This document shows, piece by piece, positions 32,923 through 37,200 of a stretch of 64,000 nucleotides of DNA. The stretch's first letter is position 1. Each line of letters opens with the position of its first letter. A model generated the notes under the pieces. It ran no database searches. It worked only from the letters and a program-made list of their open reading frames with translations, and was not told where the DNA came from. This DNA comes from Ostrea edulis (Eukaryota), in NCBI RefSeq assembly GCF_947568905.1, contig NC_079164.1:77438001-77502000 (forward strand), read 5' to 3'. Made by a program: the position numbers and the translations under genes.

Positions 32923-33732
32923 GAGTGAGTGTACATTTGGCTTTAAATCCCATTCAAGAGTTTTTGACTTGTATTCTAAGTGCCACAAATATGACCTACG
33001 AATGTACTAATTAAGGCTGTAGCAGCAAGGTTTCTTTATCATGTCAATGCCTACTGTGATCTTTGTTTTTAAGGTAGCTCCATCCTCATGTGACTTAATT
33101 ACCAATATTAATGGTTGAAAGTGGAAAAACTGTATTAACTTCCACTCAATATAGTTTGATTTGATTAATAACCAAAAAAAATGTTGCCACCTTTTAAAAG
33201 ATATCAGACATACAAAAACAGTCTGAGAGGTAACATCAGAAAATCACACATTTTCGTAATACAGAATAATAGAAATAGATTTTATCTATTTGTTAAGATG
33301 ACAAATTTATAATGCCAACAGTTTATAAAAACTGCCAATTCATATAAACATATAAATCAATTGTGGATACATGTATATCAGGGAAATCATTGAATAATAG
33401 ACTTACAGTAGAAGAAATACCAGCATAGGAGTTATTGCCCTTGATAACATCTATGGAAAATATAATTTAAATTACCAGATTTTTTATTTTTTAATCTAGT
33501 GAGTAAAATTCCTATGAAAAATATATTTCTTTCATGCCAAAGTTTAATTTAATAAAGATTTTTGCAAAAACCCATGACATCACATGGGGATCGATCATAA
33601 CAAAAAACTTGGTAAAGGAATAATCACAACCTATGTTAAATATTGCAAGTTTGACATGGCATCAAGATCAAGAATCAAACCTCGTTGCAAGGCAAGCACC
33701 CTTATAACCACTAGGCTGTATATTTTGCCTAT

Positions 33733-34224
33733 CACTGGTATTAAACTGATGATAGTAATGATCGTTACTATCATCCCAAGATGGTGGAAGGAAATTCCGG
33801 AAAGACCACGTTTACTTCTTATATCTATTTGTATTGTTTATTTGCGAATGATATGTAGGCAAGAAATATCATACACTAGCAACAATTACGATCAGGTGTT
33901 ATTTTATCTTTTATACAGTTCATATGAACAGAAAATTCGTAGTAATGAAAGTTCTTACGTTAATTACTATCATCATTCATTTCCGTTACTATCATCCTTG
34001 CTGTTTTTTCAACGACGAATTTTCTGTTCATATGAACTGTATAAAAGATAAAATAACACCTATAATCGTAATTGTTGCTAGTGTATGATATTTCTTACCT
34101 ACATATCATTCACAAATAAACAATACAAATAGATATAAGAAGTAAACGTGGTCTTTCCGGAATTTCCTTCCACCATCTTGGGATGATAGTAACGATCGTT
34201 ACTACCATCAGTTTAATACCGGTG
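33733..34224. mobile_element. 492-bp foldback MITE with ~210-bp TIRs, CAC...GTG ends and 5-bp TSD
   Basis: Arm 33733-33940 is the near-perfect reverse complement of 34015-34224 (few substitutions, one 2-bp indel), with a 74-bp spacer. CCTAT lies at 33728-32 and 34225-29. Confidence 0.88.
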
Positions 34225-37200
34225 CCTATAGAGATTAAAAGAGTAAACATAAGATATATGATTAATATATGTAGCAGGTGAATCAAGAGGGCTAGGTGTT
34301 TTATGATGGGTCCTATCTGTAACACTTTTTAAAACATTCCTTTTTCCCCAATTCCCAACTTTCTAAAAATGTCCAAATCATTAGCATTCACTAAATTTGT
34401 AGGAGTTAGAATGTATCTATAATAATAATGATACATTGTAATAGCCTTTATTTATCCAGGATAACACAAATTAGCATATAGCTAGTTTCCATTCTGGTCC
34501 TGCAGTACTATAAAAGTATCTAAAACATTATATAACACAATACTAATTACATGTCAATGCATGAATTCAAGGGGAAAGCAATGCCTATCAAATGTGAAAG
34601 GAAGCTAGAACTTGCATGACCTCTGTTGGTCATATTCACTGAAACTGATACTCCAATGACAGAGAATTTAGGTATTATACCTACTACTACTGGTATGTCA
34701 ATCATTTAAAGCATTACCGGAGCCTCCCACACACAAACTCTCTGTTCAAAATAATATCAGCTGAATATGAAATGATAGCCTGACTCGTGGTTCTTTCAAT
34801 AACTGGAAATATAATCTTGTTTTGAGGCATAATTCCAAATCACATGTGTTAGCTTTTTTTTCACCCCTAAGATTAACAGGGTATTTTAATATCTTTCTCA
34901 AGAACAATAGCCAGCTAGCGCAAGACCACAAAAATGGCACAACAGGAGCTTCATTCATAAGTGTGTATTATCCAACCAAATCAACGTGAACTATCCTAAA
35001 TTAACCAATCAAATTAACGGAAGCAACAAAGAGGCTGTTTGGCTCCTCCTACTTATGACACAGACTTCTAAAATGGCTAATTGATCTGTAGATCATCTCT
35101 ATACCAACTTATATCAACTGGTGAACTTGTTTCTAAATTCACTACAATAGCAGCATGTTACAGAATAAAGTGATTACACTGTGACTTAACTAAAATAAAA
35201 CGCTTCAAAGGAAAATACTTATAACGGTTCTTTTAACTCAATTTACACAAAGGTAAGTGAAATACTTTGATGTGAAACTTTAGAAAGTGTGACAATTAAA
35301 ATACTATAATCTAAGGAAACATTCCTCTTCTGGATATATATATAAACAGATGTACACACATCAGCAATGAAATCTTGATTTATAACAAAAAAAATATTGA
35401 GTTAAATCACATATTTTTTTTATCAGACGTGAATTAATAATAAAGGTGTAAATTACATTTGCACCCAAAAAACCTTGTATGAGTAAAGTGACTAAGTTGA
35501 AAACACATGCAATAATTGTTAAACAGCCTGTCAAAGTCTGAACAAAATCAGGAGAACTCATGCATGACTCTTTACTTATAATACACCAGGAGAATTTGTC
35601 AGAAAGCAGTGGAAGCCAATTAAGTGTATTGTTAAAGTAAAGCAAAATTATCCCTCGGCACCATGTAATGAAAAACGTTTCTTAATCATATATTTAGCAA
35701 AGTTAGCTGTTAAAGCGGAGGAGCAATTGAGAATTCAATCTTTAAAAAAAATTTGAATTTTCAATCCAAGTTCTTGATGTACTGATTATCAGCACCATAC
35801 TCAGTATCTAGGCAGGTCCAAGAAAACTAATTACCTGACTTGTTTAATCAATTGGACAGGCAATCAGCTTTATAGAGACTATATTTTCCAATACCCATGC
35901 AGTGTGAGTGATGTGCAAAATAATCATCATCCTGCAGTCTCTACTAATTTGTATTCTGGTAATGTACACAAAATTGTACAGTCCCCAATTATAGTCAAAC
36001 TCTCCTCGGGGGAAATCATTCTATTGATAATTAACTTAATTGTATTGCTTTGGATTTAAACAAATATTTTATCATCATCATATTGCAAAATTCAAATAAA
36101 ATCCTCTGGAAAAACCACAATCAAGAAAATTAATGGATGAGTTCTTCAAAACCATTGGGGGTCAAATACTGGATACAAAAATTTGATTCCCAATTGAGCT
36201 TAAATAAAAAGAAGGTGAAAAAAGTTTACACAAAAATTTTGATGCTTAGGGTTGATGGATTTGAAATGCAAAGACAGAGTTAATAAGATAAATATACGTG
36301 TCCCATGTGCTATACAGTTTTCCATTATGTGTACCAATGAAAAGGCTTTGTCACAAGGATTATATTTACTAAATATGAAAATCTCTATACTAACATTTAA
36401 AAAGTTAAACACAATGTTAATGAATTCCATGTGTGGGTCGATGTCAAGGTCAGTGTTATGAAATGTGGCAATGATGGAAAAACTTATCAAATCCCTCTCC
36501 CTAACAGTTATATGCAATAGCAAAGAGAGGATCTTTGCATGATATACCAGTATAAGTATACTCACGTTAAAACACCAGTCAAACGTAGAAACACCCCTCA
36601 ATGCAAGGTGGCAGAGACATTTATTTCAATAGACAATAAATCTTCTCTTTATTTCCTTCTAAGAGAGTTTCAGAAACTGAACCTCCTTATGATGACAGTT
36701 TTAGCAGCAGTTTTGTATAACAAGTTACAGCCATCACAGTTGTTCTGATTTTCTGACACTAACAATACATGGCAGCCAAATTCTACTCACATAAAAATAT
36801 CAGAATGTTGGTTTTTTGTTTGTGGGTTGTTTTTTTTCTTCTTTCTTTTCTTTTATTTTTAAGGATTCCACCAATATCTGGGTTTGTATGATAAAGAGAT
36901 TTGACATATAATACCAGAACCACTTTCTCTCTTTGAATGTATACACCCTGGGTTTCAATTATCAATAACCCAGGTCAGTTTCTGTAATCATCTCATTTTC
37001 TCAGGACTTGGGGATAATTAAAAAGGAGGAGTGCTTACAGCCTGCATATGTAGATCACTGGCCAGTATTTAATGAGTGTGTGTATACTATAATACAATGG
37101 TTCACCTATAGGTATCTGAGATACACAGGGCTAATTATCAGAGGAAACATTTGTGGAGGAGGCAAACCCTGCCAAAATACCCCCTGAAGACTACCACATA

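What the first reader, a model, noticed from the sequence alone, without database searches (positions are those of the whole stretch)
33728..34229. Foldback element with CAC...GTG ends and 5-bp TSD: Transib/RAG-transposon signature
Seen: ~210-bp near-perfect TIRs starting CACTGGTATTAAAC / CACCGGTATTAAAC, a 74-bp spacer, and CCTAT immediately on both sides. Established: CAC termini with 5-bp TSDs typify Transib and ProtoRAG/RAG-like transposons, whereas CACTA (2-3 bp) and Chapaev (3-4 bp) differ. RAG-like elements are known in oysters. Inference: this is a young non-autonomous partner of a Transib or RAG-like transposase. Caveats: no RSS-like nonamer is evident, and the duplication could be read as 6 bp (GCCTAT) if the last G is assigned to the TSD.
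Basis: partly seen in the sequence, partly recalled or inferred. Interest (0 to 1): 0.72.

Follow-up and report, generated by a model that had tools for sequence, protein, structure and literature searches.

The report
Oyster foldback MITE with CAC ends
This is one copy of a few-hundred-copy family of small, hairpin-shaped, non-coding jumping genes in an oyster genome; it is real but ordinary, and its link to the RAG/Transib enzymes is not shown, because half of its sister copies carry a 6-base rather than a 5-base insertion scar.

Summary
Window 33733-34224 is a 492-bp palindromic element. Its ends are CACTGG...CCGGTG, its arms are 211 and 213 nt (95.8% complementary with gaps), the centre is 68 nt, and CCTAT lies on both sides. 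It belongs to a family with a 509-bp consensus. The 23-nt terminus occurs 383 times in this ~895-Mb oyster assembly, against 0 for the reversed control. No copy I read encodes a transposase, so it is a foldback MITE.

The Transib/RAG reading is only partly supported.
- **TSD length:** of 25 copies with both ends, 13 have 5-bp TSDs and 12 have 6-bp TSDs. The two lengths are mixed within one subfamily.
- **TSD composition:** TSDs are AT-rich (20% GC, roughly A-N3-4-T). RAG, RAGL and Transib TSDs are reported as GC-rich and almost always 5 bp.
- **Terminus:** it shares only CACT with the published protostome RAGL TIR consensus.
- **No long copies:** among all 261 exact termini, no pair spans more than 3.6 kb.
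- **No nearby RAG1:** no RAG1-core match lies within 240 kb of an exact terminus.

The genome does hold three RAG1L-RAG2L families, one nearly identical across copies with an open 995-aa frame. The mobilising enzyme stays unidentified. Earlier scan notes describe similar CAC-ended elements elsewhere in this genome.

The parts
33728..33732 (.). left target-site duplication CCTAT
   Evidence: identical to 34225-34229
33733..34224 (.). whole foldback MITE copy, 492 bp, CACTGG...CCGGTG
   Evidence: It aligns over its full length at 86-91% to at least 20 other genomic copies
33733..33943 (+). left arm (long terminal inverted repeat), 211 nt
   Evidence: 95.8% complementary to the right arm in a gapped alignment
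33748..33775 (.). subterminal 28-bp palindrome made of the 12-mer GATGATAGTAAC/GTTACTATCATC; a candidate transposase-binding motif (inferred)
   Evidence: I7, D1, D2. The 12-mer occurs 7 times in the family consensus
33944..34011 (.). 68-nt centre. Compared with the 509-bp family consensus, this copy has lost about 17 bp of the inner left arm. It holds further copies of the 12-mer (33962-33975, 33984-33997)
34012..34224 (-). right arm, 213 nt. Its terminus is CACCGG on the minus strand, against the family consensus CACTGG
34182..34209 (.). subterminal 28-bp palindrome of the right arm
   Evidence: I8, D2
34225..34229 (.). right target-site duplication CCTAT

Best explanation
The element is one copy of a non-coding foldback MITE family. 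The consensus is 509 bp, with 232-nt perfectly complementary arms, and there are a few hundred copies.

It moves, or moved, by cut-and-paste. A DDE-type transposase supplied in trans recognises the conserved CAC...GTG tips, and probably also the repeated 12-mer GTTACTATCATC next to them. It inserts the element into AT-rich sites of the form (C)-A-N3-4-T-(G), with a 5- or a 6-nt staggered cut.

No element with the same ends and a transposase gene exists among the exact-ended copies of this assembly. The enzyme is therefore encoded either by an element with different ends or by one that has been lost.

The tips and the 5-bp scars place the family nearest the CACTA-Mirage-Chapaev-Transib group, with Transib/RAG-like as the nearest named member. 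The family does not meet that group's TSD rules, so the superfamily should be left unassigned.

Shown: the anatomy, the copy number, the TSD lengths and composition, and the lack of coding copies. Inferred: DDE cut-and-paste, the binding role of the 12-mer, and trans-mobilisation.
For: - **Anatomy:**
- **Family size:** 383 termini against 0 control; 261 exact 23-mer termini.
- **TSDs:** 10 exact 5-bp, 8 exact 6-bp, 3 and 4 with one mismatch. The two lengths are mixed among the least diverged copies and within the 128/382 T>C subfamily.
- **Target preference:** TSD GC is 20%, against 43% in the 12-nt flanks and 34% in the window. C is enriched at -1 and G at +1. The base just outside 261 termini is T 159, A 51, G 36, C 15.
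- **Longer copies do not code:** L033 (3.5 kb), L034 (2.3 kb) and L035 (1.7 kb) hold only a nested reverse-transcriptase fragment and non-coding DNA.
- **Pairs of exact termini:** all 38 span 0.28-3.55 kb.
- **Occupancy:** contigs from three independent studies bridge a junction of the window copy.
Against: - No transposase was linked to the family, so 'DDE cut-and-paste' rests on anatomy alone.
- 122 termini with 1-2 mismatches were never listed, and one of them could bound an autonomous copy.
- No empty-site allele or excision footprint was seen (contigs only).
Confidence: 0.7

Rival explanations
1. The family is the non-autonomous partner of a Transib or RAG-like (RAG1L/RAG2L) transposase of this genome. 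That enzyme nicks at CAC, hairpins the flanks and integrates with a stagger that is mostly 5 nt.
For: - CAC...GTG tips are invariant over hundreds of copies.
- 13 of 25 TSDs are 5 bp.
- Three RAG1L-RAG2L families are present. One has copies 97-99% identical and an open 995-aa RAG1L.
- In cell assays, RAG-family integrations with 3-7-bp TSDs are accepted as genuine (PMC10629977, methods).
- The resident RAGL ends also do not match the published protostome TIR consensus, so that consensus does not describe these elements. The MITE's mismatch to it therefore counts for less.
Against: - 12 of 25 TSDs are 6 bp. Natural RAGL and Transib TSDs are 'invariably' or 'almost always' 5 bp (PMC7204232).
- TSDs are 20% GC, against GC-rich for RAG, RAGL-B and Transib (PMC10629977).
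- There is no AAA at TIR positions 8-10.
- No exact terminus lies within 240 kb of any of the 41 RAG1-core matches.
- No MITE terminus lies within the 1.5-kb flanks of 12 RAGL loci.
Confidence: 0.3
2. The family belongs to an animal hAT lineage of the hAT5/hAT6 type, whose members make 5-bp or 6-bp rather than 8-bp duplications.
For: - hAT families with 5-bp (hAT5) and 6-bp (hAT6) TSDs exist and sit together inside an animal hAT lineage (PMC12730594).
- TSD length varying by one base within one hAT family is on record: hATm makes 8 or 9 bp (PMC6004678).
- Subterminal short repeats like the 12-mer are usual in hAT elements (my own knowledge).
- The tip CACTG fits the hAT rule YARNG at 4 of 5 positions (my own knowledge).
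Against: - The third base is C, where hAT ends have A or G.
- The target pattern A-N-T flanked by C and G is the reverse of the hAT pattern nTnnnnAn (my own knowledge).
- No hAT gene was tied to the ends, because no pair of exact termini is long enough to hold one.
Confidence: 0.15
3. The family is moved by a so far undescribed lineage of CAC-ended (CMCT-like) transposases whose normal stagger is 5-6 nt at AT-rich sites.
For: - The described CMCT lineages give 2-5-bp TSDs with CA..TG ends (PMC12730594); here half of the TSDs are 6 bp.
- The AT-rich target differs from that of Transib/RAG.
- Earlier scan notes list several other long-TIR, CAC-ended families without a transposase in this genome.
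Against: This is an argument from absence: no candidate protein was found. Repbase and Dfam could not be consulted, and they may already hold such families.
Confidence: 0.2
4. It is not a mobile element at all, but a chance palindrome or a locally duplicated inverted repeat.
Against: - 383 dispersed termini on all ten large contigs, against 0 control.
- Different flanks and different TSDs at each locus.
Confidence: 0.01

Closest known systems
Non-autonomous Transib / RAG-like (RAGL-B) elements of molluscs (Martin et al. 2020, PMC7204232)
   Same: CAC...GTG tips, no coding capacity, 5-bp TSD in about half of the copies, and a host genome that carries RAG1L-RAG2L transposons.
   Different: Half of the TSDs are 6 bp. 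The TSDs are AT-rich rather than GC-rich. There is no AAA (TR2) at TIR positions 8-10. The arms are 232 nt, against a conserved core of about 15 bp. No RAG1L element with these ends was found.
hAT5 / hAT6 families (hAT elements with 5-bp or 6-bp TSDs; cited in PMC12730594)
   Same: TSD lengths of 5 and 6 bp, subterminal short repeats, and occurrence in animals.
   Different: The tip is CAC, not CAG/TAG/CAA. The target pattern is not nTnnnnAn. Both TSD lengths occur within one family here, whereas hAT5 and hAT6 are named as separate groups.
CACTA/EnSpm and Chapaev (CMC group)
   Same: The tip CACTG and the repeated subterminal motifs.
   Different: Their TSDs are 2-4 bp. No copy here has one.
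Foldback elements such as Drosophila FB and Galileo (from my own knowledge)
   Same: Almost the whole element is two long inverted arms. The arms carry matching substitutions. One-armed remnants broken at the hairpin tip occur.
   Different: FB has 9-bp TSDs and Galileo 7-bp TSDs, and they belong to the MuDR-like and P superfamilies. No sequence similarity was tested.

Membership tests
MITE (generic non-autonomous TIR element) | Small size, TIRs, TSDs, no coding capacity, many copies of uniform length | tested here: met
   Copies of 481-513 bp; 232-nt arms; TSDs in 25 of 25 two-ended copies, counting those with one mismatch; no ORF with a Pfam transposase; 383 termini.
Transib / RAG-like non-autonomous element | 5'-CAC...GTG-3' termini | tested here: met
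   CAC is invariant.
Transib / RAG-like non-autonomous element | 5-bp TSD ('invariably' or 'almost always', PMC7204232) | tested here: not met
   13 of 25 copies have 5 bp and 12 of 25 have 6 bp. The window copy itself has 5 bp.
Transib / RAG-like non-autonomous element | GC-rich target duplication (PMC10629977) | tested here: not met
   TSD GC is 20%, against 34% in the window and 43% in the near flanks. T lies outside 61% of 261 termini.
Transib / RAG-like non-autonomous element | Terminal positions 1-11 align (at most 1 mismatch) to an autonomous member with the same TSD length (Repbase rule, PMC4455052) | tested here: inconclusive
   Against the published protostome RAGL consensus CACTWMCAAACKTYKBB, only 8 of 17 positions agree (by reading). 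The ends of the resident RAGL families could not be read and do not match that consensus either. Repbase is not on hand.
Transib / RAG-like non-autonomous element | A longer copy with the same ends encodes a RAG1-core/Transib transposase | tested here: not met
   The 38 pairs of exact termini span at most 3.55 kb, and the three long ones I read do not code. The nearest RAG1-core match to any exact terminus is 240 kb away. Termini with 1-2 mismatches were not listed.
CACTA/EnSpm, Chapaev | 2-3-bp (CACTA) or 3-4-bp (Chapaev) TSD | tested here: not met
   No copy has a TSD shorter than 5 bp as its best reading.
hAT (hAT5/hAT6 type) | 5-bp or 6-bp TSD | tested here: met
   However, both lengths occur in one family.
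hAT (hAT5/hAT6 type) | Termini YARNG, and a partner with a hAT dimerisation domain | tested here: inconclusive
   CACTG has C at position 3 (the rule is from my own knowledge). No partner of any kind was found. hAT5/hAT6 consensus ends are not on hand.

The most novel reading that the evidence does not exclude
The family, together with the other long-armed CAC-ended elements noted in this oyster, is moved either by the apparently intact multi-copy RAG1L-RAG2L transposase of this genome or by an undescribed CAC-end transposase lineage. That enzyme's natural stagger would be 5-6 nt at AT-rich sites. This would be a natural RAG-type transposase with relaxed target rules and hundreds of non-autonomous substrates in a protostome.
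Probability: 0.2. Interest if true: 0.65.

Novelty: new member of a known kind. Interest (0 to 1): 0.3.

Why it matters
In itself this is a routine repeat annotation. It matters slightly more because the genome also carries near-identical RAG1L-RAG2L transposons with open frames. If those enzymes move this family, oysters would offer a natural RAG-like transposase with a large set of substrates and unusual 5-6-bp, AT-rich integration. That would bear on how target choice changed on the way to V(D)J recombination. If they do not, the family is a warning: 'CAC ends plus one 5-bp TSD' is not enough to call a Transib/RAG element, because half of the sister copies break the rule.

Tried and rejected
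- **Longer copies.** L033, L034 and L035 hold only a reverse-transcriptase fragment (weak PF00078 match, E = 2e-4, below Pfam's cut-off), a very abundant ~275-bp repeat, and non-coding DNA.
- **One-armed matches as ends of a larger element.** They are truncated copies with unrelated flanks and no second arm within 10 kb on either side.
- **RAGL loci.** No MITE terminus lies within the 1.5-kb flanks. Family 1 extends beyond all the 4.8-kb loci. I did not try to read those letters by any other route.
- **Full listing of exact termini**. No pair is of autonomous size.
- **Same 14-mer with a different 15th base**: 28 scattered hits, no pairs.
- **Published RAGL TIR consensus as a pattern**: fewer hits than the control, and none beside RAGL copies.
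- **RAG1L relatives in other molluscs**. The best has 48-52% identity, and no CAC-ended inverted repeat with a TSD was found around the one locus that has both flanks.
- **Empty-site allele**. The runs are kept as contigs only. Junctions are occupied in three studies, and no joint across the element was listed.
- **tRNA and Rfam scans of the region**: nothing.
- **Literal search of papers for the terminus**: nothing.
- **5 bp plus an extra element base as an explanation of the 6-bp TSDs.** Rejected, because the sixth base is duplicated on both sides.
- **A 6-bp stagger in all copies.** Rejected, because the sixth base differs in the 5-bp cases.
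Full report
**1. What is there**

Window 33733-34224 is a 492-bp element that begins CACTGGTATTAAAC and ends GTTTAATACCGGTG. CCTAT lies immediately on both sides. The arms are 33733-33943 and 34012-34224. The ungapped repeat finder reports 183 nt at 91% plus 50 nt at 98%. A gapped alignment gives 204 of 213 columns, 95.8%.

As single-stranded DNA the element folds into one hairpin of -222 kcal/mol, z = -42. No tRNA, Rfam family or credible ORF lies in or beside it. 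The one 155-aa ORF across the left arm is an accident of the repeat.

**2. It is a family**

The window's own assembly has 895 Mb with ten large contigs, and the public runs that hold the stretch are labelled as oyster. A search of it gave at least 40 scored matches out of 362 candidates. The 23-nt terminus, with up to 2 mismatches, occurs 191 times forward and 192 times reverse, against 0 for the reversed control. Exact matches number 261.

Twenty-one full copies give a 509-bp majority consensus whose 232-nt arms are 100% complementary. Copies carry 6-20 substitutions against it. The window copy carries 16, plus a ~17-bp loss in the inner left arm.

The 12-mer GTTACTATCATC or its complement occurs seven times in the consensus. 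It forms a 28-bp palindrome 15 nt from each tip, and further copies sit at the centre. I take these to be protein-binding sites; this is inference.

**3. Target-site duplications**

Of the 25 copies for which I hold both ends:

| TSD class | Copies |
|---|---|
| exact 5 bp | 10 |
| exact 6 bp | 8 |
| 5 bp with one mismatch | 3 |
| 6 bp with one mismatch | 4 |

These counts come; the raw flanks are. The 6-bp cases cannot be 5 bp plus a stray base, because the sixth base is present on both sides. The 5-bp cases cannot be 6 bp, because the sixth base differs. Both lengths occur among the least diverged copies and within the subfamily marked by the mirrored change at consensus positions 128/382. 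One mobilisation system therefore made both lengths.

The TSDs are 20% GC, against 43% in the 12 nt on either side and 34% in the window. C is enriched just before the TSD and G just after it. Over 261 termini, the base outside the tip is T 159, A 51, G 36, C 15. The preferred site is roughly C-A-N3-4-T-G.

**4. Search for the partner**

- **Longer copies with the same ends.** These exist at 3.55, 2.28 and 1.75 kb (L033-L035), and four more pairs of 1.35-2.13 kb are known by coordinates only. The ones I could read contain a nested reverse-transcriptase fragment (weak PF00078 match, below Pfam's cut-off), a very abundant ~275-bp repeat and non-coding DNA. None contains a transposase.
- **Complete list of exact termini.** It forms 38 forward/reverse pairs, and none is longer than 3.55 kb.
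- **Same 14-mer, different 15th base.** Requiring the first 14 nt but a different 15th base gives 28 scattered hits (control 6) and no pairs.

**5. RAG-like genes in the genome**

PF12940 (RAG1 core) gives 41 matches. The 12 best loci fall into three families plus an older copy. In each family a RING finger plus RAG1 core is followed by a convergent Kelch/PHD gene, which is the RAG1L-RAG2L arrangement.

Family 1 has at least seven copies that are 97-99% identical over more than 4.8 kb, and two of them have a 995-aa open frame. Its closest database relatives are mollusc RAG1L proteins at 48-52% identity.

None of the 12 loci contains the MITE terminus. The nearest exact terminus to any of the 41 matches is 240 kb away.

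I could not read the true ends of these elements. I did not try to obtain those letters by another tool.

The published protostome RAGL TIR consensus is not enriched in the genome (50 hits against 106 in the control), and no hit lies beside the RAGL copies. The resident RAGL ends are therefore simply unknown.

**6. Comparison with what is known**

- RAGL and Transib elements have CAC ends, and their TSDs are 'invariably' or 'almost always' 5 bp (PMC7204232).
- Those TSDs are GC-rich (PMC10629977).
- The CACTA-Mirage-Chapaev-Transib clade as a whole gives 2-5-bp TSDs with CA..TG ends (PMC12730594).
- hAT families with 5-bp (hAT5) and 6-bp (hAT6) TSDs exist in animals (PMC12730594).
- Variation of TSD length by one base within a family is known, for example 8 or 9 bp in hATm (PMC6004678).
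- Repbase assigns a non-autonomous element to a superfamily only when TSD length matches and termini 1-11 align with at most one mismatch (PMC4455052).

By that rule this family cannot be filed under Transib with the data in hand. The tip CAC fits, the TSD length fits in half of the copies, the TSD composition does not fit, and no terminal alignment to an autonomous element is available. It fits CACTA and Chapaev by its tip but not by TSD. It fits hAT5/6 by TSD but not by its tip.

My odds for the enzyme:

| Candidate enzyme | Odds |
|---|---|
| Transib/RAGL-type | about 0.3 |
| Undescribed CAC-end lineage | about 0.2 |
| hAT5/6-type | about 0.15 |
| Other known groups | the remainder |

**7. 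Other evidence**

- **Occupancy.** Contigs from three runs of three studies bridge the left (33563/33568-33759) or right (34193-34310) junction without differences. The insertion is therefore shared among sampled oysters. No contig joining the two flanks was listed. Contigs cannot show absence.
- **Mirrored substitutions.** Copies show mirrored complementary substitutions on the two arms: 17 pairs among 251 substitutions, four of them in the window copy. The arms are thus kept alike in the source copies, as reported for other foldback elements (my own knowledge).
- **One-armed copies.** Five copies end within about 15 bp of each other, just past the hairpin tip at the start of the second arm, and have unrelated flanks. 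This fits breakage of the palindrome at its tip (inference).

**8. Verdict**

This is a real foldback MITE family, fairly young and of moderate copy number.

Earlier notes of this scan list several other CAC-ended, long-armed, 5-bp-TSD elements elsewhere in this genome. One follow-up on such an element reached the same 'enzyme not identified' conclusion. I did not test those notes.

Noticed in passing
L036-L040, L042, L045 (G000 C2:108461600, C3:19999665, C3:15528294, C7:74525486, C8:9123772, C1:93113451, C7:42066489): A RAG1L-RAG2L transposon family with at least seven copies, 97-99% identical over more than 4.8 kb. RAG1L has a 995-aa open frame in two copies (RING + importin-binding region + RAG1 core). 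A convergent Kelch/PHD RAG2-like gene follows. The ends were not reached.
   Followed up: partly
L041/L043 and L044/L046; L047: Two further RAG1L-RAG2L families (95% and 97% identical pairs, about 65% identical to each other at the DNA level) and an older copy with several stop codons. The best database relatives are mollusc RAG1L proteins at 48-52% identity.
   Followed up: partly
L028:109-386, L029:170-447, L030:129-407, L031:156-433: One-armed copies of the MITE. All break just past the hairpin tip, within about 15 bp of each other at the start of the second arm. Their flanks are unrelated and there is no second arm within 10 kb. This looks like palindrome breakage at the loop followed by loss of one arm.
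   Followed up: partly
consensus positions 128/382, 53/457, 86/424 and others (copies in L005, L010, L014, L015, L018 and the window copy): Complementary substitutions at mirrored positions of the two arms, some shared by several copies. The arms of the source copies therefore evolve together.
   Followed up: partly
L033:2071-2354 and, inverted, L033:2526-2750: A ~275-bp sequence lying next to a reverse-transcriptase gene end. It has thousands of candidate matches in the genome, and the 40 scored ones are 98-100% identical. It is a very young, very abundant repeat, possibly the tail of a retroelement.
   Followed up: no
G000 C8: 6.8-47.3 Mb (minus strand) and 66.4-74.3 Mb (plus strand): Eleven of the 28 genome-wide matches to CACTGGTATTAAACA lie on one contig. 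All are on the minus strand in its first part and all on the plus strand in its last part.
   Followed up: no
window 33200-33300, 33408-33459, 33512-33615, 34448-34499: The flanks of the MITE are themselves made of high-copy repeats (very high summed contig depth in all four runs). The element therefore sits in a repeat-rich, non-coding stretch.
   Followed up: no
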